Source of the DNA: Malacoraja senta
Taxonomy: Eukaryota
Assembly (NCBI GenBank): GCA_038087875.1
Contig: CM075977.1
Span: 265,670,001-265,734,000, forward strand
Reading direction: 5' to 3'
DNA: 64,000 nucleotides
Shown: one piece after another, positions 10,088-62,872 of the stretch
How positions within the stretch are numbered: position 1 is the first letter of the stretch
Layout of the letters: each line of letters starts with the position of its first letter
Notes under the pieces: generated by a model
The model's input: only the letters and a program-made list of their open reading frames with translations
Databases searched by the model: none
What the model was told of the DNA's origin: nothing
Made by a program: the position numbers and the translations under genes

Positions 10088-10168
10088 GATGTAAAGCACT
10101 TTGGTCAACGAGGGTTGTTTTTAAATGTGCTATAGAAATAAAATTGACTTGACCTGACTTGACTTGAA
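10088..10168 (+). mobile_element. L2-type LINE/SINE 3' tail
   Basis: TGTAAAGCACTTTGGTCAAC...TGTGCTATAGAAATAAAATTGACTTGAC tandem tail. Confidence 0.6.
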
Positions 10169-10299: not shown

Positions 10300-11143
10300 G
10301 CTTTTAGAAACATTTTCTGGAGATCTGAGTGGGTGTTAATGCCATATGCAATGCATGTTTAGAGCAACAACAAAAAAGTGACACACATTTTCTAGGCATT
10401 TTATCTTTCCAGCAGCATTATGAGATCTCACCTCCAAACATTTAAAGACTTGATGATAATAGTCCTTGACAAACATGGTATTTGACATCAATGGTTTCTT
10501 CGCTAAAATTGCCATTGATCAATAACTCCCTCCCCTAACCTTTTCACCATTAGGTTACAGTTTAATGATCATTAAGATATGGGCCCACAAAGAGAGCCGT
10601 TGAAGTTTAGGAGAACTACCAGTGGTCAATTACTTTTGTAGCTACTGTAATAAAAATATACTTTAGCATATCTGCTGCAGCTTACATATAGTATAATAAC
10701 AGATGCAATACAGTATGTAACAGGTAATGTTTAAAAATACAATTTATCAGCTCAATGGTCACAGTATAATACTGTATTCTTGAGGACATTAAGCATGCAT
10801 TTACATAAACAATATATTAAATTTTAAAAAGAAATTATACATTTAAATGTCTTTGTTTTAAATCTACGTACACCAATTAGAATCTGGTGATGGCCGACCA
10901 GTAATGAGCTTATACAATTTGACCATTTTTTTCAGATGTCACGGTTTCTAAAATTTCACTTTAGATATTACACATTATTTTAAAATAAATTTAAGGTTAG
11001 ATAATAAAAACCTGAAGTAACCTGTTTTCCCATTTCTGAATTTTAAAATCTTTTAGTCCCATGTAAAATATACATCAAAAGTATGAAATGTATTTGTTTT
11101 TTCGGTCATTATGGAAGAAACTAAAAGATGTCTGGTCAAGAGT
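10300..11143 (-). other. Putative AU-rich 3' UTR downstream of the Kunitz exon stop
   Basis: Repeat-free, very AT-rich sequence directly after the stop. AATAAA overlaps the stop (11143-11148); further minus-strand AATAAA near 9882-9887 and about 9400. The true end cannot be determined. Confidence 0.45.
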
Positions 11144-11352
11144 TTATTTATCCATCCTCTGTATCAGTTCTGTGCCTTGATAGTTTCCTGGTAAGCAGGT
11201 TTTCTCGCACTCTTCTTGAGTGTTGAATCTATTTTTGTTTCCTTGGCAACCACCAAAAACAAACTGTTCACACTGCCTGGTGTCCACACTAAAGAACCAT
11301 CGCCATGTTGGAGTGTGGCACTTCCCAATCTTCCGGGGCTGCTGGCAAACTG
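11144..11352 (-). CDS. HHIP: BPTI/Kunitz domain terminal exon, predicted spliced to HHIP exon 13: AVCQQPRKIGKCHTPTWRWFFSVDTRQCEQFVFGGCQGNKNRFNTQEECEKTCLPGNYQGTELIQRMDK*
   Basis: Six Cys with exact Kunitz spacing C-8-C-15-C-7-C-12-C-3-C and the FxFGGCxGNxNRF motif. Polypyrimidine acceptor TTTTTCATTGTTTTCTTCCACAG, phase 1. No Met or signal peptide of its own. Same strand as HHIP and in frame with the exon 13 donor. The domain call is near certain; linkage to HHIP is inferred. Confidence 0.85.
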
Positions 11353-11454
11353 CTGTGGAAGAAAACAATGAAAAATAATTCTGAATAAAAAGCCAAATGA
11401 ATTGTTTTACAAATCCAAATTATTGGATGAATGAAATTACAGAATTATTTACTG

Positions 11455-12738
11455 TTTAAGAAGGAACTGCAGATGCTGGAAAATCGAAGGTAGACAAAAA
11501 TGCTGGAGAAACTCAGCAGGTGAGGCAGCATCTATGGAGCGAAGGAAATAGGCAACGTTTCGGGTCGAGACCCTTCTTCAGACTGATGTGAGGGTGGGGG
11601 GGGGGGAGAAGAAAGGAAGAGGTGGAGCCAGTGGGCTGAGGGAGAGCTGAGAAGGGGAGGAGAAAGCAGGGACTACCTGAAATTAGAGAAGTCAATGTTC
11701 ATACTGCTGTGGTGTAAACTGCCCAAGTGAAATATGAGGTGCTGCTCCTCCAATTTACAGTGGTCCTCACTCTGGCCATGGAGGAGGCCCAGGACAGAAA
11801 GGTCAGATTCGGAATGGGAGGGGGAGTTGAAGTGCTGAGCCACCGGGAGTTCAGGTTGGTTATTGCGAACCGACGAGCGGAGGTGTTGGGCGAAGCGATC
11901 ACAAAGCCTACACTTGGTAGAGCAGCTGACATCTAGAGCAGCGATGCAATAGATGAGGTTGGAGGAGGAGCAGGTGAACCTCTCCCGCACTTGGAAAGAC
12001 TGCTTGGGTCCTTGAATAGAGTCAAGGGGGGAGGTAAAGCGATAAGTGTAGCATTTCCTGCGGTTGCAAAGGAAAGTTCCCAGAGAGGGCGTGGTTCGGG
12101 TGGGAAGGGACGAATTGACCAGGAGTTATGGAGGGAGCGGTCTCTGCGGAAAGCAGACAGAGGAGGAGATGGCAAGTGGTCGGATCACATTGGAGGTGGC
12201 GAAAATGTCGGCGGATTATTTGTTGTATGTGATGGCTGATAGGGTGGAAGGTGAGGACAAGGGGGACTCTACCCTTGTTACGAGTGGGGGGGATGCGGAG
12301 TGAGAGCAGAGTCATGGGGTATAGAAGAGACCCTGGTGAGAGCCTCATCTATAGTAGAAGAGGGGAACCCCCGTTCCCTGAAGAATGAGGACATCTCCGA
12401 TGCCTTGGTGTGGAACACCTCATCCTGGATGCAGATGTGGCGTAAACGGAGGAATTGGGAGTAGGGGATGGAGTCCTTAAAGGAAGCAGGGTGGGATGAA
12501 GTGTAGTCCGGATAGCCATGGAAGTCAGTGGGTTTATAGTGGATGTCGGTCAGTAGTCTATCATCTGCGATGGAGATAGTGAGGTCAGGAAATGGTAGGG
12601 AAATGGTCCAGGTGTATTTGAGTGCCGGATGGAAGTTAGTGGTGAAATGGATGAAGTCAGTGAGTTGTGTGTGGGTGCAGGAGGTAGCATCAATGCAGTT
12701 GTCGATGTAGCGGAGGTAGAGTTTGGGGATAGTGCCCG
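11455..12738 (-). mobile_element. Penelope-like retroelement fragment (RT C-terminus, GIY-YIG endonuclease, terminal repeat)
   Basis: LYLRYIDNC, HPALKYTW, SIPYSQFLRLR, FTCSSSNLIYCI and VAQHFNS motifs; frameshifted. Confidence 0.9.
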
Positions 12739-13774
12739 AATTATTACTGTCATTATTTACTGTGATGGATTCTGATTGCACTTTTTTTGAATATATAATA
12801 ACTTTATTTGTATAGCACTTTTCATACAATTGAATGCAACCCAAAGTGCTTATCATTCCCGGCTTCCTCTAAAATGGTTCAACTCTGAAATATTCAGATG
12901 AAAGGTTGTTGGTCTGAAACATTAAGGATGTCCTCTGTAGGTACTGTCTGTCTAGCCAGCTATTTAAAGCATTTATATGTATGTATGTACGTACGTATGT
13001 ATGTATGTGTGTATTTATTTATTCATTTCAAATTTCTGGCATCTGTAGCATTTTCTTTTTGCTAACTTCGAGATTAATTATTTAACAACACTCTAATGGA
13101 ACTAATTTATTGTATTCAATGTAAATAAACAAATGAAATGAATAATGATAGTTAGAATAGATACATCTCCAAGACAAAGCGATGTCTACTCCGAGGCATT
13201 GCAATGGGTAAGCAAGGAAACTGAACTTTTCTTGTTTCAAGAATTGTGGCAGTAGATTGTAATTTGGCAGGATGAACGTTTTGTGGGCAAGGCCAGCATA
13301 TATTGACCATGCCAAATGGTAATTGGGGGGTGTGAGCTGTTGCCTTCTACCAATGCAGTGTTTTTCATGAAATTGCCCTCACAGTGCTGTTGGGAAGGGG
13401 CGATTAGTGATTAGGCGTAGTGGCGAGAATAAAATGGCAATATAATTTCAATTATGGATGGTGTATAACTTGGAGAGGAATCTACACAGCGCAGCGTTCC
13501 AATGCAACTGGAATCTCAGCTTTCTGGGTGGTAGACAATGCGGTTTGGGAGGTGCAGTTGGAAGAGCGAGTAACAGTCATGCCTTTGGTATTTGCTGCAC
13601 ACCGTTCTTGCTGTGAACTGGCACAGTGGAAGGAAGGAATATTTAGCATGATGGACAGGGGTACCAATCAAGCAGGATGATTTGTCTTGGGGATGAGCTT
13701 GACAATTACTGAATCAATATGCATCCAGGCAAATGGAAATGTTCCAGTACACTCCTGCCTTGTAACTTTTGAAT

Positions 13775-14192
13775 GGTCATAGAGAATTATAGTCACAGAG
13801 TCAAACAGGCCCTTTGACCAAACTTGTCCATGCCAACCAACATACACAATCTACAATAGTCTCACCTGCTTTAGTTTGGCCCATATCCCTCTAAACCTAT
13901 CCTATCCATTTACCTGTCCAAATATTTTACAAACAGTGACAGTACCTGCCTCAACTACTTCCTCTGAAGGTCTGAAGAAGGGTCTCGACCCGAAACATCG
14001 CCAATTCCTTTTCTCCATAGATGCTGCCTCACCCGCTGAGTTTCTCCAGCATTTTGTGCCTACTTCCTCTGTCAGCTCGTTCCATATACTTACCATCCTT
14101 TGTGTAAAAAAGTTCCTCTTCAGGTTCCTATTAAATCTTCCCACCCTTATCTTAAACATATGTCCTATGGTTCCTGATTCTCCTACTCTGGG
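13775..14192 (-). mobile_element. CR1 3' end interrupted by a Penelope-like terminal repeat (about 13965-14058)
   Basis: RFNRNLKRNFFTQRMV..WN remnant, split by an insert flanked by CTACTTCCTCTG duplicates. Confidence 0.75.
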
Positions 14193-14637
14193 ATGGTGGA
14201 AAGGCTTTGGCAGATGAAGAGGGTGTCACTCACTACAGGATACCCAGCTTCTGACTACATGTGTACCAAAGCATTAAAAAAAAAAGATGGATGGCCGAAA
14301 TTGCCTTTTTCCGTTTTAAACCTACTTCACTCTCATATATTTATCATGGAATTCTTTACATTAGCTCCAGATCTATTAATTTAACGAACACCAATCAGGA
14401 ATCCTGACATAACTATAGGTTTTATAAGAGGTTTTGACAAGCTTACTTTCCAGATATAGCATCTCCTCCATGTTGCAATAAAATATTCTGTAAGGTTGGT
14501 CAAGTGTTTTCAGTTTTTACTTCATTGATTCAAGAAATTTAATAACAAATGATGAACCACAAAACATCTATAGATTTTAAGCACATTGTGATAGTTATTT
14601 TTAAAAATAATGACACTATGGTACCATGGATCTGATT

Positions 14638-14960
14638 GGGTGGCACAGTGGTGCAGCATTAGAGTTGCTGCCTTACAGCATCGGAGACCAGTATTCAATC
14701 CTGACCATGGGTGTTGTCTGTACGGAGTTTGTACATTTCCCTGTGACCGTGTGAGTTTTCTCTGGGTGATCCCGTTTCCCTCCCACATTCCAAAGATGTG
14801 CAGGTTAGCCGGTTAATTGACTGCTGTAAATTGCCCCTAGTGTGTAGAATTCAAAACTGGGATAACAGAACTGGTGTATGGGTGATTGTTGGTTGGTTCA
14901 GATGCGGTGGGCCGAAGGGCCTGTTTCCATGCTGTATCTCTAAACCTAAATTTAAACTGA
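14638..14960 (+). mobile_element. tRNA-derived SINE (HE1-like)
   Basis: Same head, body and tail as 24493-24810. Confidence 0.85.
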
Positions 14961-15034
14961 ATCTATGTACAGTATATCACAATGACTGCATACCATACTT
15001 TAAAATAACCCATGAATAAATACTACTTTTATGA

Positions 15035-15870
15035 GAGCACAAAATGCTAGAGTAACTCATCGGGTCAGGTCGCATTTCTGGAGGACATTGATAGATGAAG
15101 TTAGACAAAAATGCTGGAGAAACTCAGCAGGTGAGGAAGCATCTATGGAGCGAAGGAAATAGGCAACGTTTCGGGTTAAACCCTTCTTCAGACTGATGTG
15201 GGGGTGGGGGGGCGGGAGGAAGAAAGGAAGAGGTGGAGTCAGAGGGTTGAGGGAGAGCTGAGAAGGGGAGGAGAAAGCAGGGACTACTTGAAATTAGAGA
15301 AGTTAATGTTCATACCGCTGGGGTGCAAACAGCCCAAGCAAAATATGAGGTGCTGCTCCAATTTACAGTGGTCCTCACTCTGGCCATGGAGGAGGCCCAG
15401 GACTGAAAGGTCGGATGCGGAATGGGAGGGGGAGTTGAAGTGCTGTGTCACCGGGAGATCAGGTTGGTTATTGCGAACCGAGCGGAGGTTTTGTGCGAAG
15501 CGATCGCCAAGCCTACGCTTGGTCTCACCGATGTAGAGCAACTGACATCTAGAGCAGCGGATGCAATAGATGAGGTTGGAGGAGGTGCAGGTGAACCTCT
15601 GCCGCACCTGGAAAGACTGCTTGGGTCCTTGAATGGAGTCAAGGGGGGAGTTAAAGCGACAAGTGTAGCATTTATTGCAGTTGCAAAGGAAAGTGCCCGG
15701 AGAGGGGGTGGTTCGGGTGGGAAGGGACGAATTGCCCAGGGAGTTACGGAGGGAGCAGTCTCTGCGGAAAGTTACGGGTCAGGACCCATGTTCAGACTGA
15801 AGATGGGTCCTGACGTGAGTTACTACAGCACTTTGTGGTCCACACAAGATTCTAGCATCTATAGTTCCTT
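15035..15870 (-). mobile_element. Penelope-like element 3' fragment with GIY-YIG domain
   Basis: ORF 15284-15607 reads NLIYCIRCSRCQLLYIGETKRRLGDRF; tandem and inverted terminal-repeat pieces at the ends. Confidence 0.88.
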
Positions 15871-15951
15871 GTGTTTAATACTTTTACTCAATCTGTGAAA
15901 TAGATAATTTTTAAAATATTTTACGAAAGTCTCATTAACTACTAGAGCAAG

Positions 15952-16013
15952 TTAGTACGTTATTATTCCAAAGGTATATATATATATACATGAATCTGCC
16001 AGTTGAATAATAC
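15952..16013 (-). CDS. HHIP: Read-through tail of exon 13 (GIIQLADSCIYIYTFGIITY*), positional equivalent of the hydrophobic C-terminal helix of bony-vertebrate HHIP
   Basis: The frame stays open past the internal donor to TAA at 15952-15954. Similar length and hydrophobicity to the recalled human GILDQIIDMTSYLLDLTSYIV*, but weak identity and it contains a (TA)7 run. Confidence 0.5.
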
Positions 16014-16142
16014 CTGCCCTTGCCACTCTTTCAATGTTTCTATCCACTTGTTCGCACTGTGGTCCAGTGTAGCTCTCCTTACACAAGCATTTATTTGGTC
16101 GCACACACACACCACCATGCTGACAAACTGGGTCGCACTTTG
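16014..16142 (-). CDS. HHIP: HHIP exon 13 core (EGF2): AKCDPVCQHGGVCVRPNKCLCKESYTGPQCEQVDRNIERVARA, ending at an internal donor AG|GTATTA
   Basis: Manual translation closely matches HHIP EGF2. Acceptor TTTTTTTAACAG; 129 bp to the internal GT; phase 1 at both ends. Confidence 0.93.
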
Positions 16143-22196: not shown

Positions 22197-23075
22197 ATAG
22201 ATACAAAATGCTGAAGTAACTCAGCGGGTCAGGCAGCAACCCTGGAAAAAAGAAATAGGTGACGTTTCGGGTAGAAACTCTTCATCAGACTGAGAGTCAG
22301 GGAGGAGGAAAAATAGAGGAATGAAAAGGTTCAGAACAAGTCAGAGTCAGCAGAAATGACCAAGGAAAGGTGGAGCCCACAATGGTCCATTGCTGGCTGT
22401 GGAAGTTGTGATAATGAAGGGATGTATGGATGTGAACAACAAAACTGGCAGGACCACTAGGATGGGGAGGAGCAGAGAGGGAATGCAGGGGTTACTTAAA
22501 ATTAAAGAAATCAATATTTATACCACTAGGTTGAAAGCTGCCCAAGTGAAATATGAGGTGCTGTTCCTCCAATCTGACAGTGGAGGAGGCCCAGGACAGA
22601 AAGGTCGGTAAAGAAATGGGAAGGGGAGTTAAAATGTTTGGCAACTGGGAGGTTGCTGGGCCAAGGCGGACTGAACGGAGGTGTTCAGTGAAATGATCGC
22701 CCAGACTACGCTTGGTCTCGACAATATATAGGAGCCCACACCTGGACCAGCGATACAATAGATGACGTTGGAGGAGGTACAAGTGAATCTCTGCGTCATC
22801 TGAAAGGACTGTCAGGGTCCCCGGATGGAGAGAGGAGGTATAGGAACAGGAGTTGCAGGGGTAGTACCTGGGGAGGGTGGTTTGGATGAGAAGGGATGAG
22901 TGAAAAGGGGAGATGCGGAGCAAACGGTCTCTGCAGTAGGGGTGGAGATGGGAAGATGTGACTAGTGGTGGGATTCCGTTGGGGGTGGTCTGAAGAAGGG
23001 TCACTATCCCCTATCCGTTTTTTCCAGAGAAAATGCCTGACCCGCTGACTTACTCCAGCATTTTGTGTCTATCTG
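22197..23075 (-). mobile_element. Degenerate Penelope-like fragment bounded by inverted terminal repeats
   Basis: CGLLYIVETKRSLGDHF and LEEQHLIFHLG remnants; terminal repeat present in opposite orientations at the two ends. Confidence 0.75.
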
Positions 23076-24006: not shown

Positions 24007-24155
24007 CCTCTCTGCAGAATTCTCCTTCCCAGCCTGGATTACAGCAGCATATTCCTGTAGGCGTGCAAAGTCCATTTCTACACAGATGCGAGCACTCTGC
24101 TGCCAATGGTTGTGGAGGCAACACTAATTTCTTACATTCTTCTGGAACCAAGGGT
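24007..24155 (-). CDS. HHIP: HHIP exon 12 equivalent (EGF1): PLVPEECKKLVLPPQPLAAECSHLCRNGLCTPTGICCCNPGWEGEFCRE
   Basis: Manual translation gives the characteristic CRNGxCTPTGxCCCxPGWEGxFC. Acceptor TTTTAAACCAG, donor GTAGGT, 149 bp. Confidence 0.96.
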
Positions 24156-24492
24156 CTGGTTTAAAATAAAAATAATAACAAATGTTTATTCTGTTTGGTG
24201 AAAAAGTATATTATGTCAAATCTCTGCTGGTTTATGGTCATAGAGAGATACATCACAGAAACAGGCCCTTCAGCCCATGAGTCCACACCCACCGTCCTTA
24301 CACACTAATCCTATACTAATCCCATTTTTTATTCTCCCTACATTCTCTTCATAGATTCTACCTTTCACCTACAGAATGAGGCCATTTTACAGTGTCTAAT
24401 TAACCTACCAACTCACTTGTCTTTGTTATGTGGGTGGAAACTGAAGCACCCAGAGGAAATCAATGTGGTCCCAGGGCAAATGTGCAAACTCA

Positions 24493-31012: not shown

Positions 31013-34000
31013 TCCCATTCGTACATGGTCATTTCTCATAGTTTCAGTAGGCAGTCTGTAAAATGGGGCAAAGATATGGGGCAGACATAAAGACACTGAC
31101 CCAATTTTTGCAGGAAATTGTTGATAAAATTACTTTGGTATTTCCATGCACGGGCAAGGGTAATTTGTTGCTGGATTGCATCTAATGTTCGTTTCTAATG
31201 GGGTAGTAACTTCGGCAAAATGCCTTCTGCTTAAATCCTGGCAGAAATGAGTCTTTGGCTGGGAGCCCCTACTCTGAATTGCAAATAAAAATGTGCCTCC
31301 TGAGAATTGAGAGTAAGGCTATATTCAGATGGCCATCAGTCAGACCCATGCTGCAGTTTTGGGGGGGGGGGGGGGTGGGTGTCGGTGCATGGGATTAGTG
31401 CTCGAATATATAAGGATTGGACCTGTGTGGTGGTTTGCGAAACTCGGTTAACATAGAACTAATGAACGGGTGCGGACTTGGTGAGCCGAAAGGCCAGTGG
31501 TGGTTTGAAGAGTGGTTTTCCAGGAGCAGTCTGAAGATTAGGATTGGTGAGGAGAACTCAGTTTCATTGCAATAAAGATTATGGCAGAGACTGAGAGGTT
31601 TGAATGTCAAGGCTTCCATTGAAGACCTTGGATTATTGGGGCTTGGTGCTTCATCAGTAACACAGGAGGCCAGATGTATGAGAGGTAGGTAAGGATAACA
31701 TTATCATGTGCAGTGCAATATGGAAATTGTGTCAAATCAGAAAGGTGTTTCAAATGAAGGTGTTTCATAAAATAGCCTAGAAATGGCCATTGTCTCCTTT
31801 TGCTCAAGGTAAGATTGATTTCCTCCTCTGAAACACACAGAATAATGGAAATGAAATCCTTGTCAACTTTAAAAACTTTCAAATGTATTCTTTATCAAAT
31901 GCCTAATGAATTTTCATTCTTCAAGGTTTTTAAAAACATTTAGATTTTTGTAAAAGAACGTTTTAGATTTTTGGCTCTTCTTTGAAATTTTAAACTATGA
32001 AAAAGATCGTGTTTTAATCTTGGCTGTATTGGTTAAGAGATGTGGCTTCACTGACTATCAAAGTACTATGCTATGTTATGTGGGTGAGCCTTGGTTTGCC
32101 CTCTATCTGTCCCTTTCATTCTCTCCAACAACCTCAACTATTGTTACAACCCTAGGTTGTAATATTGTATAATTTGATATTGTTCAATGCACGTTCCTAA
32201 ATGCAAAATGCTTGGCTAGTTTAATGGAATGACCGATACTCTTGTACTTAAGATTGCCTCGAGCACACTCAGAAACTGAAAGTACATGGCAGTGTAAGCA
32301 GTGAAAAAATTCCCATTAGTGGCAAATTAGTGAACCTTTGTTCTGCAAGTCCACCGATGAAGAATTCACTCTGTAAACTTAACTTACAAATGATGTTCTC
32401 CAATCAGTTAAGGATGGATATGGACCTAGAGTTGAAAGGTTAATATCCAACCCACTGTGCCACCCAGTTTGCACAACCCACCAACATTGTTGTCCATTTG
32501 TACAACTATGGGAACTACATCAATCATTAAATATTTGTAGAGAAAATATTGAACCAATGCCCAGGATTAGCAGAGGAAAATCATTGCAAGTAATATGAAG
32601 AATTACACTAACATTCATCTTGTTTAGGTAAGGCAGTGGAAAAGATTTCTCCTTTGTAAAAATAACTGAGGATATTTTACTCTGTATCTGTAGCAAAAGG
32701 AAATTAAAATCGTAATGCATAAATGCATGATTTCTGGTGTCAGAACACTATAATTAAAACTTGCAGGAGATTAATACTGTACTGGCATCTTCTAGTCTAC
32801 AGCCTTTAACAGCTATGACACTTTTGAAAAATGATACCCACTCTGCCTTGCATTGATGGCAATAGCTCAAAGGTCAGCACAAATACTAAACAGTTTGTAT
32901 TACTATCAGGGTGGCCATGAAAACAACACCTGCTGTACAAGCCACTTGACCAAACAGCTGGGTCAACAGTCGCTGTGGGAATTTATCAATGTAACATCTA
33001 TCACAGGAGAGGGCAAGAATCTACTACCGTTCTCTGAAGTTAGTTTAAGTGTTTGGAAAGTTGAAATACACACACATTATTATTAAAGCTCTTAAGGGAA
33101 TGGTTTCTGCGTGTGGCTGAGTAATTGAGATAAGCAATCTGGGGCAATGTTATGCTCACTGACTAAATTCATAACATAATGCTAATTTTAGTACGTCACC
33201 CTTTACGAAGAATGATATTAATTCACAAGGAAAAATGAATAGCCAAACATTATATAAAGCTGAAAACGTTAAAAAACACTACTGGCAAAAAATATTGTTA
33301 ATTAATAGCTTAAAGGCAAAAATAATTGGGAATACTCCAACTAGTCATCTATGGGGCCGGGGGGTGCGGAGAGTGCGGGTAGGAATGGGGAGGATTGAGT
33401 AAGCTGCCAAAATACAGGAGCCACTCTTTCAGCCACTGTAGCACATTATGCTCATCACATCACCACTGTAACCCATTACCATGGATCAGCACAGTGCAAT
33501 GTGAGGTCCCAGTGTAACCCTCCAGATACTTCAATTTCCAGACCACCCCGCTAGCCTGGGCAAAGTGAGCACAAAACCAAGGTCAGGCAAGCTAGTCTCT
33601 TGAAATCAGATACAGGACTGTATTAGGCATAATGCACAACCTATTCATACAGCCAAACTCAAATCACGTAATCCAATTTGGGAAGAATTGTTTGTTATCT
33701 GACATTGTAGCATGTCCAGCTCGTTGCAATCCTGTTCTGGTGTGCATAATAATTGTTCCTTTGGATCATAAGACTGACTTCTTCACCACTGATTTCTTAA
33801 TTAGCATGATTTAATGCAAATAATTTACTTATGGCATCTCACCATGAACGAACAAATTTATAAAATACCCTTAACGTAGCAAAATGGCCCAAGGAAATTC
33901 ATAGGTGTAGCAGCAAACATCATTCAACAATGAACAAGCTCAGAAGACCAAAAGGTTGCTCAGGGTGGCTCCTAAGACTGTTTTAAGGGAGGGAAGAGAA

Positions 34001-35355: not shown

Positions 35356-37491
35356 TTCTTTCTTTTTAAATCTTTTTATTCGTTTTTTTCCAAAAAACAA
35401 AAACAAAACAAAAAACAAAACAAAAAGAATAATGATAAACATAACAATGATATTGATACATAGGGATCAGGATTACATTAATAACAGGTATAACCTAAAT
35501 ATGAGTCCAGTGTCAAAATACACATTGAATATAGACCTCCCGGTCTCTATGTAAATATAGTTAAATGTTTAAAAGAAAACTTATATATGTAGAAAAAAAA
35601 CAAAAAACTAAAAAGAAAAAAAAAGAAAGAAAAGAGAAAAAAGGAAGAAACAAACCCCCCTTAAACTAGAAAAAAAAGTAAAACAGAATCTGAGCTGAGA
35701 ATTTCAACAATTTAAGTCCCTGTTTGTCATCGTCCGTTCAACCATATAAAGGTAAAATAATTTCTATAACGGTTGGAGAGGGAGCAATATATGTTGTGTG
35801 AAAGTGTTGAATAAAATTTCCCCAAGTCTTATCAAATTTAACCAAGGGTTCAACAATGTCACTCCTGATTTTTTCTAAATTTAAACATGATATCGTTTCA
35901 GAGTACCAATGGAGTGTGGTCAGAGGGTTAGAGTCTTTTCACTTAAATAAAATAGATCTTCTGCCGATTAATGTGGTAAAAGCAATCAGCTGATGGGCGG
36001 AACGGGACAAATGAATAGAATCCAACATTGGTAGCCCAAAAATTGCAGTAATAGGATGAGGTTGTAAATCAATACCTAAAACTACAGAAATAGTATCAAA
36101 AATGTCTTTCCAATATGTTTCCAAAAGTGGGCAGGACCAAAACATATGGGTCAGTGGGGCCACTTCAGAGTTACATCTGTCACAGGTAGGATTTATAAGA
36201 CCATAAAAACGAGCTAACTTATATTTTGACATATGAGCTCTGTGAACCACCTTGCATTGTATCAGAGCGTGTCTTGCACACATTGAGGAAGTATTAACTA
36301 ATTGAAGAATCCTCTCCCATTTCTCTATAGATAAAGAAATTTGGAGTTCTCTTTCCCAGTCATTCTTAATTTTATCAAATATATCTATTTGTAATTTCAA
36401 AATCAACTCATAAATAGTCGTTATTAATTCTTTCTGATAAGGGTTCAAATGTAATTTTTTTCCCCAAGATTTCGGTTTGATGTGGTAGCGGAAAAAAGGG
36501 CAGAGTAGCCTTCAAAAAAATGTCTAATTTGTAAATATCTAAAAAAGTGTGAATTAGGTAAATTATATTTATTGGAAAGTTGTTCAAAAGACATAAAACA
36601 ACCATCCAAAAACAAATCACGAAAAGCTACTAATCCCTTCCTCTTCCATAACAGAAAGGTTTGATCAGTACTAGAAGGTTGGAAGAGAGTTAGATAAAAT
36701 AGGACTCGATAAGATAAAATCATTCAGTCCAAAAAACTTACGAAATTGAAACCATATTCGAAATGTATGTCTTATTATTGGGTTAGTCGTATATTTATTA
36801 AATCTCGTAAATTGTAAAAGGTAACGAGGCCCCTAGAATAGAAGCCAATGATAGCCCTTGTATAGAATCACGTTCAAGATTTATCCATCCTGGGCATTGG
36901 GTATCTTCTAAATCTTTTGTCCAAAACGTTAAATAACGAACATTAACTGCCCAATAGTAGAATCTAAGGTTCGGCAGTGCCAAACCACCGTCATTTTTTA
37001 ATTTCTGTAAGTATTTTTTACTTAGTCTGGAATTTTTATTCTGCCATATATATGAAGACATTTTGGAATCAATAATATCAAAGAAAGATTTGGCAATAAA
37101 TCGTCTGAAATAAATACAAACATTTAGGTAAGATAAACATTTTAACAGCATTGATTCGGTCGATTAAAGATAAGGACATTGGTGACCATTTAGTAAACTG
37201 TTGTTTGATATGGTCAATTAAAGGCATAAAATTAGCTTTAAATAAATCCTTGTGTTTCTTGGTAATCTTAATACCTAAATAAGTAAAACTTTTGGTAGTC
37301 AATCTAAGTGGAAACTGTCCATAATTCAAAACTAGATTGTTTAATGGTAAAAGCTCACTCTTGCTAAGATTTAGTTTATAACCAGAGAAACTAAAGTTAT
37401 GCTACTATTGCCGGAATAGATTTCTCAGGGTTAGAAATGAATAATAACAGATCATCTGCATAGAGATAGCTTGCTGCCACTAGGAGAGTCA
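35356..37491 (-). mobile_element. 5'-truncated L1/Tx1-clade LINE (RT C-terminal part, zinc knuckle, 3' UTR) inserted into a CR1 3' tail
   Basis: Fragments SLYADDLLLFISNP, FTYLGI, DGGLALPNLRFYYWA and CDRC...HMFWSC. A-rich tail. 10-bp TSD GCCTACTCCT at 35346-35355 and 37492-37501. Confidence 0.92.
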
Positions 37492-41485: not shown

Positions 41486-41685
41486 NNNNNNNNNNNNNNN
41501 NNNNNNNNNNNNNNNNNNNNNNNNNNNNNNNNNNNNNNNNNNNNNNNNNNNNNNNNNNNNNNNNNNNNNNNNNNNNNNNNNNNNNNNNNNNNNNNNNNNN
41601 NNNNNNNNNNNNNNNNNNNNNNNNNNNNNNNNNNNNNNNNNNNNNNNNNNNNNNNNNNNNNNNNNNNNNNNNNNNNNNNNNNNNN
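41486..41685. other. Assembly gap (200 N)
   Basis: N run. Confidence 1.
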
Positions 41686-43133
41686 TTCATACCCCTTGAA
41701 CTTTTCCACATTTTGTCACGTTACAACCACAAACGTAAATGTATTTTATTGGGATTTTATGTGATAGACCAACACAAAGTGGTGCATAATTGTGAAGTGG
41801 AAGGAAAATGATACATGGTTTTCAATTTTTTTTACAAATAATAAAACTGAAAAGTGTCACGTGCAAACGTATTCAGCCCCCCTGAGTCAATACTTTGTAG
41901 AACCACCTTTCCCTGCAATTACAGCTGCAAGTCTTTTGGGGTATGTCTCTACCAGCTTTGCACATCTAGAGACTGAAATTTTTGCCCATTCTTCTTTGCA
42001 AAATAGCTCAAGCTCAGTCAGATTGGATGGAGAGCGTCTGTGAACAGCAATTTTCAAGTCTTGCCAGAGATTCTCAATTGGATTTAGGTCTGGACTTTGA
42101 CTGGGTCATTCTAACACATGAATATGCTTTGATCTAAACCATTCCATTGTAGCTCTGGCTGTATGTTTAGGGTCGTTGTCCTGCTGGAAGGTGAACCTCC
42201 GCCCCAGTCTCAAGTCTTTTGCAGAATCTAACAGGTTTTCTTCCAAGATTGCCCTGTATTTGGCTCCATCCATCTTCCCATCAACTCTGACCAGCTTCCC
42301 TGTCCCTGCTGAAGAAAAGCATCCCCACAGCATGATTCTGCCACCACCATGTTTCACAGTGGGGATGGTGTGTTCAGGGTGATGTGCAGTGTTAGGTTTC
42401 CGCCACACATAGCGTTTTGCATTTAGGCCAAAAACTTCAATTTTGGTCTCATCTGACCAGAGCACCTTCCTCCACATGTTTGCTGTGTCCCCCACATGGC
42501 TTGTGGCAAACTGCAAACGGGACTTCTTATGGCTTTTTTTCAACAATGGCTTTCTTCTTGCCACTCTTCCATAAAGGCCCGATTTGTGGAGTGCACGACT
42601 AATAGTTGTCCTGTGGACAGATTCTCCCACCTGAGCTGTGGATCTCTGCAGCTCCTCCAGAGTTACCATGGGCCTCTTGGCTGCTTCTCTGATCAATGCT
42701 CTCCTTGCCCGGCCTGTCAGTTTAGGTGGACGACCATGTCTTGGTAGGTTTGCAGTTGTGCCATACTCTTTCCATTTTCAGATGATGGATTGAATAGTGC
42801 TCCGTGAGATGTTCAAAGCTTGGGATATTTTTTTATAACCTAACCCTGCTTTAAAATTCTCCACAACTTTATCCCTGACCTGTCTGGTGTGTTCCTTGGG
42901 CATCATGATGCTGTTTGTTCACTAATGCTCTCTAACAAACCTCTGAGGCCTTCACAGAACAGCTGTATTTATACTGAGATTAGATTACACACAAGTGGAC
43001 TCTATTTAATAATTAGGTGACTTCTGAAGGCAATTGGTTGCACTGGATTTTATTTAGGGGTATCAGAGTAAAGGGGGCTGAATACTTTTGCACGCGACAC
43101 TTTTCAGTTTTTTATTTGTAAAAAAATTTGAAA
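41686..43133 (-). mobile_element. Tc1/mariner IR-DR transposon, Passport (PPTN)-like, termini truncated by assembly gaps
   Basis: Long inverted repeats (about 41820-41884 vs 43070-43133, with the direct-repeat core GTATTCAGCCCCC) enclose a DD34E transposase frame. Confidence 0.93.
41887..42906 (-). pseudogene. Full-length (339 codons plus stop) DD34E Tc1 transposase with two nonsense codons
   Basis: Reads MMPKEHTRQVRDKVV...WSDETK...FQQDNDPKH...[15 protein letters not shown]...KGGSTKY* with no frameshift. TGA at 42778-42780 (codon 43) and 42106-42108 (codon 267). 34 residues between the second D and the E. Confidence 0.92.
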
Positions 43134-43390
43134 NNNNNNNNNNNNNNNNNNNNNNNNNNNNNNNNNNNNNNNNNNNNNNNNNNNNNNNNNNNNNNNNNNN
43201 NNNNNNNNNNNNNNNNNNNNNNNNNNNNNNNNNNNNNNNNNNNNNNNNNNNNNNNNNNNNNNNNNNNNNNNNNNNNNNNNNNNNNNNNNNNNNNNNNNNN
43301 NNNNNNNNNNNNNNNNNNNNNNNNNNNNNNNNNNNNNNNNNNNNNNNNNNNNNNNNNNNNNNNNNNNNNNNNNNNNNNNNNNNNNNNNNN
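43134..43390. other. Assembly gap (257 N)
   Basis: N run. Confidence 1.
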
Positions 43391-52186: not shown

Positions 52187-53262
52187 GGTAGACAAAAATG
52201 CTGGAGAAACTCAGCGGGTGCAGCAGCATCTATGGATTGAAGGAAATAGGCAACGTTTCGGGCCGAAACACTTTATTCAGACTGATGCAGGGGGGGGGGG
52301 GGGGGGGCGGGAAGAAGAAAGGAAGAGGAGGAGCCAGAGGGCTGAGGGAGAGCTGAGAAGGGGAGGAGACAGCAAGGGCTACCGGAAATTGGAGAAATCA
52401 ATGTTCAGGCCACTGGGGTGCAGACTGCCCAAGAGGAATTTGAGGTGCTGCTCCTCCAATTTCCGGTGGTGCTCACTCTGGCAATGGAGGAGGCCCAGGA
52501 CAGAAAGGTCAGATTTGGAATGGGAGGGGGAGTTGAAGTGCTGAGCCACAGGGAGATCAGGTTGGTTAATGCGGAGGTGTTCGGCGAAACGATCGGCAAG
52601 CCTACGCTTGGTCTCACCGATGTAGATCAGCTGACATCTAGAGCAGCGGATGCAATAGATGAGGTTGGAGGAGGTGCAGGTGAACCTCTGTCGCACCTGG
52701 AACGACTGCTTGGGTCCTTGAATGGAGTCGAGGGGGGAGATAAAGCGACACGTGCAGCATCTCTTGCAGTTGCAAGGGAAAGTGCCCGGGGAGGGGGTGG
52801 TGCGGGTGGGAAGGGAAGAATTGACCAGGGGGTTACGGAGGGAGCAGTCTTTGCGGAAAGCAGACAGGGGGGGAGATGGGAAGATGTGGCGAGTGGTGGG
52901 GTCACGTTGGAGGTGGCGAAAATGACGGAGGACTATTTGTTGTATGTGATGGCTAGTGGGGTGGAAGGCGAGGACTAGGGGGACTCTGCCCTTATTCTGA
53001 GTTGGGGGATGGGGAGAGAGAGCAGTGTTGCGGGGTATTGAAGAGCCCCTGGTGAGAGCCTCATCTATGGTAGGGGAGGGGAACCCCCCTTCCCTGAAGA
53101 ATGAGGACATTTCCGATGCCCTGGTGTGGAACACCTCATCCTGGGGGCAGATGCGGCGTAGACGGAGGAATTGGGAGTAGGGGATGGAGTCTTTACAGGA
53201 AGCAGGGTGGGAAGAAGTGTAGTCTAGATAGCCATGGGAGTCAGTGGGTTTATAGTGGATAG
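52187..53262 (-). mobile_element. Penelope-like element 3' fragment, relatively young
   Basis: Uninterrupted 251-aa ORF 52379-53134 with the GIY-YIG motif (LIYCIRCSRCQLIYIGETKRRL). Confidence 0.9.
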
Positions 53263-55917: not shown

Positions 55918-56060
55918 CTGACTCATCTTCTCCAAATCCCAAAACCATTCCTGAGATCTGACCGCTATGTGAGTTTTTGCACGTAGTGCCACTGCCAAGG
56001 CACAAAGCTCGTTCTTGCCACTGTTTGTTCAAAGAACTTTGTTGAAGGCTCATCAGTTGC
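55918..56060 (-). CDS. HHIP: HHIP exon 10 equivalent: QLMSLQQSSLNKQWQERALCLGSGTTCKNSHSGQISGMVLGFGEDES
   Basis: Manual translation (not in the ORF track); KQWQE..LCLG and LGFGEDE motifs. Acceptor CTGATTTCAG, donor GTAATG, 143 bp. Confidence 0.95.
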
Positions 56061-62748: not shown

Positions 62749-62872
62749 CCATTTCGATCTCCGAAAATGTAGTTTCCAAATAGTCTTCTCGACTGGCATC
62801 CTCTGTAGATGAAGCCGCCCACTAAAGGGCTGTGGCTAGACGACTTGAATTCAACTGCTGGAGGCTCTATTT
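62749..62872 (-). CDS. HHIP: HHIP exon 9 equivalent: EIEPPAVEFKSSSHSPLVGGFIYRGCQSRRLFGNYIFGDRNG
   Basis: Hallmark LVGGFxYRGCQSxRLxGxYxFGDRNG motif. Acceptor TCTTCCAG, donor GTATGT, 124 bp, in phase with both neighbours. Confidence 0.97.

What the first reader, a model, noticed from the sequence alone, without database searches (positions are those of the whole stretch)
15952..16016. One splice donor switches between a membrane-tail and a Kunitz C-terminus, and may explain the origin of the HHIP tail
Seen: skipping the donor gives a 20-aa hydrophobic tail (GIIQLADSCIYIYTFGIITY*) and 191 coding nt for the exon. As I recall, the human exon has 194 coding nt and ends RAGILDQIIDMTSYLLDLTSYIV*. Similarity to human falls sharply right after RAGI, at the donor. 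Inference: donor use could toggle cell-tethered (short-range) versus diffusible (long-range) Hedgehog inhibition. The conserved R-A-G-I in bony vertebrates may be a relic AG|GTAT donor, so the familiar tail could be fixed intron read-through after loss of an ancestral Kunitz exon. The reverse, Kunitz gain in chondrichthyans, is also possible.
Basis: partly seen in the sequence, partly recalled or inferred. Interest (0 to 1): 0.8.

Follow-up and report, generated by a model that had tools for sequence, protein, structure and literature searches.

The report
HHIP exon end: Kunitz splice or tail
In a probable skate genome, the last conserved exon of the Hedgehog antagonist HHIP can splice in frame to an intact protease-inhibitor-type (Kunitz) exon 4.7 kb downstream, but nothing shows that this splice site acts as a switch or that the alternative hydrophobic tail is more than intron read-through.

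Summary
The sequence facts hold. On the minus strand the HHIP EGF2 exon (from 16142) contains CAG|GTATTA (exon would end at 16014). Reading through gives 191 nt, the stated 20-residue tail and TAA at 15954-15952. Splicing there joins in frame (phase 1 to phase 1) to a canonical terminal Kunitz exon (11352-11144, Pfam E=5e-20).

I recovered one real comparator, a bony-vertebrate HHIP last exon in a metagenome contig (L003). Identity is 36/43 residues up to the GT and 5/20 after it. The codons AGG GCA GGT ATT are identical, and synonymous sites just upstream are unusually conserved (13/15 against about 48% elsewhere).

The tail itself is weak evidence:
- An open frame of 20 or more codons follows 39% of AGGT sites in this window.
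- It carries a (TA)7 microsatellite.
- It lacks the amphipathic pattern of the bony-vertebrate helix.
- Its similarity to that helix is compositional only.

The donor is also weak. Published work shows the mammalian tail is an amphipathic helix on a secreted protein, not a membrane anchor.

Best reading: HHIP-Kunitz is the main product and the tail is intron or a minor isoform. The switch and the "relic donor" origin remain untested, because no transcripts and no other cartilaginous-fish sequences were reachable.

The parts
16014..16142 (-). HHIP EGF2 exon as an internal exon (129 nt, phase 1 at both ends): (A)KCDPVCQHGG...CEQVDRNIERVARA(G/A)
   Evidence: sequence. (Pfam EGF_2). (best solved relatives are human HHIP chains 2WG3/2WFT/7PGM). 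(36/43 residues identical to the L003 exon).
16008..16016 (-). Candidate 5' splice site CAG|GTATTA (exon ends at G 16014; GT = 16013-16012), phase 1
   Evidence: An approximate PWM scores it -0.24, against 1.9-3.8 for the donors of exons A, B and D, which puts it in the top 12% of all GTs on this strand. The same CAG|GTATT is present in L003 at 10125-10132.
15952..16013 (-). Read-through continuation: (G)IIQLADSCIYIYTFGIITY plus TAA (15954-15952). Probably the start of the intron, possibly a minor isoform's C-terminus.
   Evidence: The open frame is not beyond chance and the helical moment is 0.57, against 1.5 for the bony-vertebrate tail. Similarity to the bony tail reaches p=0.16 against shuffles, and 0.32 without the first two residues. 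No displaced bony-type tail exists elsewhere in the window.
15975..15988 (.). (TA)7 microsatellite lying inside the tail codons C-I-Y-I-Y-T
   Evidence: Read directly. It is too short for TRF.
15874..15879 (-). Candidate proximal poly(A) hexamer ATTAAA, 73 nt past the read-through stop, with a GU-rich stretch (tcttgtgtgg) at 15849-15840
   Evidence: hexamer list; sequence. Its use is inferred and not shown.
11353..16013 (-). Proposed 4.66-kb intron, largely Penelope-like (GIY-YIG) retroelement debris in the gene's orientation. No signal-peptide-like first exon was found in it.
   Evidence: ORFs resembling 52379-53134, which has a GIY-YIG match. (0 candidates for an independent first exon, by a crude heuristic).
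11353..11382 (-). Acceptor: a pyrimidine-rich tract ending ...cattgttttcttccacag|CA, phase 1
11144..11352 (-). Terminal Kunitz/BPTI exon: (A)VCQQPRKIGKCHTPTW...EECEKTC plus a 16-residue end and TAA 11146-11144. There is no GT between the last Cys and the stop.
   Evidence: PF00014, 71.8 bits, E=5e-20. (TFPI K1, SmCI and COL6A3 C5 are the nearest solved domains). (the only Kunitz exon in the window, Cys spacing 8-15-7-12-3).
11143..11148 (-). AATAAA overlapping the Kunitz exon's stop codon, followed by CA and a U-rich stretch. Candidate distal poly(A) site giving a very short 3' UTR.
   Evidence: Its use is inferred.
24007..24155 (-). HHIP EGF1 exon: (R)PLVPEECKK...GWEGEFCRE, donor AGG|GTAGGT, ending in phase 1
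   Evidence: aligned to L003 7311-7459.
55918..56060 (-). HHIP propeller exon B: QLMSLQQSSLNKQWQERALCLG...GFGEDES
   Evidence: (best solved relatives are human HHIP). (55-62% identical to genomic ORFs of other vertebrates).
62749..62872 (-). HHIP propeller exon A: IEPPAVEFKSS...NYIFGDRN

Best explanation
This is the 3' end of HHIP in a probable skate. The EGF2 exon is an internal exon. It ends at CAG|GTATTA (16014|16013) and is spliced across a 4.66-kb, transposon-filled intron to a terminal Kunitz exon (11352-11144). The main protein then ends ...EGF2-DRNIERVARA-A-Kunitz instead of the amphipathic helix of bony vertebrates.

The 19 residues after Gly43 are most likely the start of that intron. 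They would be translated only when the weak donor is missed and the transcript is cut at a nearby poly(A) site. The layout is that of a composite terminal exon, as in the IgM secreted/membrane choice, but a regulated, functional switch is not shown.

Shown: the sequence, phases, domain identity and homology break. Inferred: that the splice is used, which poly(A) sites are used, and any effect on Hedgehog signalling.
For: - The in-frame phase 1/phase 1 junction gives a clean Kunitz N-terminus.
- The Kunitz exon is intact and canonical, with a strong pyrimidine tract, no internal GT before its stop, and AATAAA at the stop.
- It is the only Kunitz exon in 64 kb. No candidate first exon for an independent gene lies between it and HHIP.
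- Homology with a bony-vertebrate HHIP exon is 84% in protein up to the GT and collapses within 8 nt after it.
- That collapse occurs although the bony tail matches the recalled human tail at all but one residue (the human sequence is recalled, not checked with a tool).
- The bony-type helix is encoded nowhere else in the window.
- The tail contains (TA)7, has a low amphipathic moment, and its open frame is within chance.
- Synonymous sites in the 17 codons before the GT are conserved 13/15, against 27/56 in the rest of EGF2 plus EGF1. The Fisher p=0.009 is post hoc. This pattern is expected near a used exon end.
Against: - There is no transcript, EST or annotated protein evidence. Protein database searches with either exon were blank, and no paper links HHIP and Kunitz.
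- The donor is weak: about 2-4 bits below the three confirmed HHIP donors, by an approximate PWM recalled from memory.
- The identical CAG|GTATT motif occurs in a bony vertebrate where it lies inside coding sequence. The motif alone therefore does not prove splicing.
- The read-through frame is open, and its stop lies one codon from the bony-vertebrate stop. About 10% of chance sites do the same, so this could still reflect a retained coding tail.
- There is only one comparator sequence.
Confidence: 0.5

Rival explanations
1. A genuine regulated switch. Both mRNAs are made in meaningful amounts. Competition between the weak internal donor and a proximal poly(A) site yields either a tail-bearing, more cell-associated HHIP or a Kunitz-ending HHIP, and the two differ in range of action.
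For: - The donor is weak and the distal acceptor is strong.
- Candidate ATTAAA with a GU-rich element lies 73 nt past the read-through stop.
- The read-through frame is open, and its stop sits one codon from the bony-vertebrate stop.
- The tail's composition is hydrophobic with no basic residues, which is unusual among read-through peptides of this window (1 of 92 score as high).
- Deleting the mammalian tail raises release from COS-7 cells (PMC4460154).
Against: - The tail shows no positional similarity to the conserved bony helix (p=0.16-0.32 against shuffles).
- It has no amphipathic pattern and carries a frameshift-prone (TA)7.
- An open frame of this length is common by chance (39%).
- The mammalian tail is not a membrane anchor, and full-length HHIP1 is secreted. 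The tethered-versus-diffusible contrast is therefore overstated.
- No expression data exist.
Confidence: 0.2
2. The Kunitz exon is not part of HHIP mRNA. It is either an orphan, recently duplicated or dying exon, or the last exon of another transcript. HHIP in this species would then end in the divergent 19-residue tail.
For: - The donor scores low.
- The same GT motif is unspliced coding sequence in a bony vertebrate.
- No database protein or paper shows an HHIP-Kunitz architecture.
- The interval is full of mobile-element debris, so DNA has moved in this region.
Against: - An exon with a perfect Kunitz pattern, a strong acceptor, a stop and a poly(A) signal, but no partner, would be expected to decay.
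- No alternative upstream exon was found in the 4.66-kb interval.
- The phase matches the only AGGT in the HHIP exon.
- A very strongly conserved bony-vertebrate helix would have to be replaced by unrelated sequence starting exactly at that GT.
Confidence: 0.25

Closest known systems
HHIP (Hedgehog-interacting protein) of bony vertebrates: human/mouse, PDB 2WFX, 3HO3, 7PGM; and the L003 exon recovered here
   Same: - The propeller exons and both EGF repeats match.
- The last conserved exon starts at the same acceptor in the same phase.
- The protein is 84% identical through ...RV(A/T)RAG, and the codons AGG GCA GGT ATT are identical.
   Different: Bony vertebrates continue for 20 residues as a conserved amphipathic helix (human residues 671-700, PMC8660895) and stop, giving a 194-nt exon. 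Here that helix is not encoded anywhere, and an in-frame Kunitz exon lies downstream. No Kunitz exon lies within 3.1 kb downstream in L003.
Composite terminal exons and intronic polyadenylation switches, e.g. immunoglobulin mu secreted/membrane forms and calcitonin/CGRP (established knowledge)
   Same: A 5' splice site lies inside an exon that can also be terminal. Using it swaps the C-terminus for downstream exon(s). Skipping it, with proximal polyadenylation, gives a short read-through tail.
   Different: Here neither mRNA has been observed. The polarity is reversed, because the read-through end is the hydrophobic one. The read-through tail shows no sign of selection.
Kunitz (KPI) exon of APP/APLP2 (established knowledge; APP appears among the solved relatives)
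   Same: A single phase-1 Kunitz module is added to a non-protease-inhibitor protein by splicing.
   Different: In APP it is an internal cassette exon with P1 Arg and is a potent inhibitor. Here it is a terminal exon with P1 His and P1' Thr.
C-terminal Kunitz domain C5 of collagen VI alpha-3, and TFPI Kunitz 1 (nearest solved single domains, about 54-55 bits)
   Same: Canonical six-cysteine Kunitz fold signature. COL6A3 C5 is also a C-terminal appendage of an extracellular protein and is not a trypsin inhibitor (established knowledge).
   Different: There is no orthology. The similarity is generic for the family. The reactive-loop residues differ.

Membership tests
Kunitz/BPTI domain (PF00014) | Match to the family profile above the curated threshold | tested here: met
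   71.8 bits against a cutoff of 21, E=5.1e-20, covering profile positions 1-52 of 53.
Kunitz/BPTI domain (PF00014) | Six cysteines with spacing C-8-C-15-C-7-C-12-C-3-C | tested here: met
   Counted on the translation. The pattern scan finds it once in the window.
Kunitz/BPTI domain (PF00014) | Canonical inhibitory loop: Lys/Arg (or a large hydrophobic residue) at P1, directly after the second Cys, and a small residue (Ala/Gly) at P1' | tested here: not met
   The loop reads G-K-C-H-T-P-T-W, so P1 = His, P1' = Thr and P2' = Pro. In one search the same position in TFPI K1 and SmCI is aligned. Protease inhibition is therefore uncertain, and the domain may be a binding module.
Kunitz/BPTI domain (PF00014) | Kunitz three-dimensional fold | tested here: inconclusive
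   the single-sequence AlphaFold2 model has mean pLDDT 55. It shows a hairpin plus a C-terminal helix in the expected order, but confidence is too low to search with.
HHIP | Beta-propeller exons most similar to HHIP | tested here: met
   the only solved relatives of exon B are human HHIP chains (E=4.5e-9). Only two propeller exons lie in the window.
HHIP | Two EGF repeats after the propeller | tested here: met
   EGF1 at 24155-24007 and EGF2 at 16142-16014.
HHIP | C-terminal amphipathic helix (human 671-700) | tested here: not met
   The basic start (DRNIERVAR) is present. After RAG(I) the sequence is unrelated: helical moment 0.57 against 1.5, 5/20 identities, and not above shuffles. No copy lies elsewhere in the window.
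HHIP | N-terminal cysteine-rich domain and complete six-bladed propeller | not testable with these tools
   These lie upstream of the window. One expected small exon between 55918 and 24155 was also not located.
Composite terminal exon / splice-versus-polyadenylation switch | Internal 5' splice site in frame with a downstream terminal exon | tested here: met
   phase 1 on both sides, and the joined frame is open to the Kunitz stop.
Composite terminal exon / splice-versus-polyadenylation switch | Functional proximal poly(A) site after the read-through stop | tested here: inconclusive
   ATTAAA at 15879 with a GU-rich element about 25 nt beyond it. Such hexamers are common in AT-rich DNA.
Composite terminal exon / splice-versus-polyadenylation switch | Both mRNA forms observed | not testable with these tools
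   No transcript data for this species are reachable. Searches were blank, and the database holds only genomic ORF fragments of vertebrate HHIP.

The most novel reading that the evidence does not exclude
The jawed-vertebrate ancestor's HHIP had EGF2 as an internal exon spliced at this CAG|GTATT site to a Kunitz exon. Bony vertebrates lost the Kunitz exon and turned the first 60 nt of the intron into today's conserved amphipathic helix. The unusually conserved synonymous sites before the GT in both lineages would mark splicing control sequences that are still active. This would imply an unrecognised use of this donor in bony vertebrates too.
Probability: 0.15. Interest if true: 0.75.

Novelty: new variant of a known kind. 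Interest (0 to 1): 0.45.

Why it matters
HHIP is the one secreted, dedicated antagonist of Hedgehog ligands. How far it acts depends on its surface-retention elements, the C-terminal helix among them. A cartilaginous-fish HHIP that swaps this helix for a Kunitz module would be a new domain architecture for a core developmental regulator. It would offer a natural experiment on what the helix does. It would also give a possible link between Hedgehog antagonism and extracellular proteolysis or a new binding partner.

The conserved nucleotides around the GT in a bony vertebrate also raise a testable question: is there an unnoticed RNA-level function at the end of the HHIP coding region? No paper I could search describes any of this. 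Automatic annotations of shark and ray genomes, which I could not consult, may already show the fusion.

Tried and rejected
- **Protein word-index searches** with the Kunitz exon and the EGF2+tail exon found no candidates.
- **Exhaustive representative search** with propeller exon B returned only bacterial-style ORF calls on short vertebrate genomic contigs.
- **Fetching those contigs** gave 1.4-4.5 kb pieces, too short to reach the last exon or to walk along.
- **Scans of viral and prokaryotic genome collections**, by protein patterns and by a conserved 20-mer, found nothing.
- **ESM Atlas look-alikes** of the Kunitz exon gave generic Kunitz clusters and no HHIP-Kunitz cluster, which is not informative.
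- **Decayed Kunitz exon** downstream of HHIP in the bony-vertebrate contig: none, but only 3.1 kb was available.
- **Conserved 3' UTR** shared with L003: none.
- **A displaced or frameshifted bony-type tail** in the window: none.
- **An independent signal-peptide first exon** between HHIP and the Kunitz exon: none, by a crude heuristic.
- **Kunitz structure prediction** without an alignment had low confidence, so I ran no fold search.
- **The joined EGF2-Kunitz protein** was not submitted to any search. It has no reference, and I did not type long sequences.
- **The small propeller exon** expected between 55918 and 24155 was not found. I did not try to fill the two N stretches (41486-41685, 43134-43390).

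Full report
**What is there**

The gene runs on the minus strand.

- Exons at 62872-62749 and 56060-55918 encode propeller segments. Their only solved relatives are human Hedgehog-interacting protein chains.
- 24155-24007 encodes EGF1.
- The exon starting at 16142 encodes EGF2.
- One small propeller exon expected between 55918 and 24155 was not located.
- Two N stretches lie in that interval, and I left them alone.
- Another follow-up note of this scan calls the genome a skate (s1-140171). I did not test that.

**The observation**

From 16142 the frame reads KCDPVCQHGG...CEQVDRNIERVARAG, then IIQLADSCIYIYTFGIITY, then TAA at 15954-15952. Codon 43 (GGT) carries the only AGGT of the exon: CAG|GTATTA, with G at 16014 and GT at 16013-16012.

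**The Kunitz exon**

The Kunitz exon lies 4.66 kb downstream on the same strand. A pyrimidine-rich tract ending ttccacag precedes an exon at 11352-11144.

- Its translation matches Kunitz_BPTI at E=5e-20.
- It has the canonical cysteine spacing 8-15-7-12-3.
- It has no GT between the last cysteine and its stop.
- AATAAA overlaps the stop, followed by CA and a U-rich run.
- It is the only Kunitz exon in the 64 kb.

Both the GT and this acceptor are in phase 1. The join gives ...RVARA-A-VCQQPRK..., a normal Kunitz N-terminus.

The interval between the two exons is mostly Penelope-like (GIY-YIG) element debris. A crude scan found no signal-peptide-like first exon that could start an independent gene there.

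The reactive loop reads G-K-C-H-T-P, so P1 is His and P1' is Thr. By established knowledge of Kunitz inhibitors, this is atypical for a trypsin-type inhibitor. The nearest solved single domains are TFPI Kunitz 1 and collagen VI alpha-3 C5, at generic family-level similarity.

**A real comparator**

Protein databases were blank for both exons. A scan of JGI metagenome contigs, however, found one vertebrate contig, L003, carrying the homologous last exon.

- The exon is 194 nt (L003:9999-10192).
- It ends ...RVTRAGILDQILDMTSYLLDLTSYIV.
- Its length agrees with the mouse A679-V700 tail of Holtz et al. 2015 (PMC4460154).

So L003 is a bony vertebrate of unknown species.

**Shark versus L003**

| Measure | Result |
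|---|---|
| Protein identity up to Gly43 | 36/43 |
| Protein identity after Gly43 (one gap) | 5/20 |
| End of the blastn match | window 16006, 8 nt past the GT |
| Codons at R-A-G-I | AGG GCA GGT ATT, identical in both |

The window encodes no bony-type helix in any frame or place.

**Synonymous sites**

I counted codons that encode the same amino acid in both sequences and asked how many are identical in nucleotide sequence.

| Region | Identical codons |
|---|---|
| First 27 codons of EGF2 | 10/22 |
| EGF1 | 17/34 |
| The 17 codons up to and including GGT ATT | 13/15 |

Fisher's exact test gives p=0.016 within the exon and p=0.009 against both controls. The partition was chosen after seeing the data, and there is only one species pair, so this is suggestive only.

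The logic matters. A donor that died more than 400 million years ago would not hold synonymous sites. Conservation of this kind points to a constraint still acting in both lineages. That could be splicing signals at a used exon end, or some other RNA-level element. It does not point to a relic.

**Is the tail meaningful?**

Probably not.

- On this strand, 39% of AGGT sites read open for 20 or more codons in the same phase.
- 10-12% of them stop within one codon of the bony-vertebrate stop.
- The tail codons C-I-Y-I-Y-T are a (TA)7 microsatellite (15975-15988), which is frameshift-prone.
- Mean hydropathy is 1.23 (best 19-mer 1.46), and the helical moment is 0.57. The L003 tail has a moment of 1.5.
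- Its alignment score to the L003 tail is matched by 16% of shuffles of its own residues, and by 32% without the first two residues.
- Only 1 of 92 other read-through peptides scores as high. The resemblance is therefore in composition, not in position.

**Is the donor good?**

It is weak. I scored it with an approximate position weight matrix whose frequencies I recalled from memory. It scores -0.24, against 1.9, 3.2 and 3.8 for the three confirmed HHIP donors here, and ranks in the top 12% of all GTs on the strand. It does offer six consecutive U1 pairs (CAGGUA).

The same motif sits unspliced, as far as is known, in bony-vertebrate coding sequence. The motif alone therefore proves nothing. 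The argument rests on three things together:

- the phase match;
- the intact terminal exon with no other partner;
- the homology break at exactly that GT.

**Function and literature**

- Mammalian HHIP1 is secreted with its tail.
- The tail is modelled as an amphipathic helix unlikely to span a membrane.
- Retention at the cell surface is through heparan sulfate bound by the N-terminal domain.
- Deleting the last 22 residues does raise release from COS-7 cells (PMC4460154).
- Griffiths et al. 2021 describe residues 671-700 as a helix that contributes to surface binding (PMC8660895).

'Membrane-tethered versus diffusible' therefore overstates what a tail/Kunitz swap would do. No paper I could search links HHIP with a Kunitz domain or describes HHIP architecture in sharks or skates.

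**Verdict**

I put about 0.7 on the Kunitz exon being spliced to EGF2 at all. That splits into 0.5 for Kunitz as the main product with the tail as intron or noise, and 0.2 for a real two-isoform switch. I put 0.25 on the exon being an orphan or belonging to something else.

The direction of evolution is open: Kunitz lost in bony vertebrates, or gained in cartilaginous fishes through a pre-existing cryptic GT. There is no outgroup and only 3.1 kb of downstream sequence in the one comparator, with no Kunitz remnant in it.

The layout works like a composite terminal exon, as in the IgM secreted/membrane choice. Membership of that class needs both mRNAs to be seen, which these tools cannot show.

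Noticed in passing
window 32801-32994 and 33089-33140 (matching L003 2404-2591 and 1959-2010): A block of about 190 nt and a second of about 50 nt inside an HHIP intron are 83% identical between this genome and the bony-vertebrate contig. Stop codons occur in every frame and there is no Rfam match. This is a deeply conserved non-coding element, plausibly a developmental enhancer.
   Followed up: partly
window 16014-16064 (minus strand), L003 10077-10132: Synonymous sites in the last 17 codons before the GT are conserved 13/15 between the skate-like genome and the bony vertebrate, against about 48% in EGF1 and the rest of EGF2. A possible RNA-level element sits at the end of the HHIP coding region.
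   Followed up: partly
window 11143-11148: The Kunitz exon's stop codon TAA is embedded in an AATAAA hexamer, followed by CA and a U-rich stretch. If used, the 3' UTR would be only about 20 nt long.
   Followed up: no
window 52379-53134, 22492-23004, 15284-15800, 11513-12856 (all minus strand): Several decayed copies of one retroelement family with a GIY-YIG nuclease motif (Penelope-like) lie in the same orientation as HHIP. Two of them fill the proposed EGF2-Kunitz intron.
   Followed up: partly
window 42106-42696 (minus) and 35939-37329 (minus): A Tc1/mariner-type transposase fragment (HTH_Tnp_Tc3_2, E=3e-24) and a LINE-type fragment (weak zf-RVT match) lie in HHIP introns.
   Followed up: partly
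window 24156-55917: The small propeller exon expected between exon B and EGF1 (bony vertebrates have one there, by my own knowledge) was not found by pattern search or tblastx. The interval holds two N stretches (41486-41685, 43134-43390), the second flanked by long CT/GA-rich low-complexity sequence.
   Followed up: partly
window 24142-24157: EGF1 has two possible acceptors 14 nt apart (aaaccag|A at 24156/24155 and ttccag|AA at 24142/24141). Alignment to L003 shows the upstream one is the conserved boundary (PLVPEEC).
   Followed up: yes
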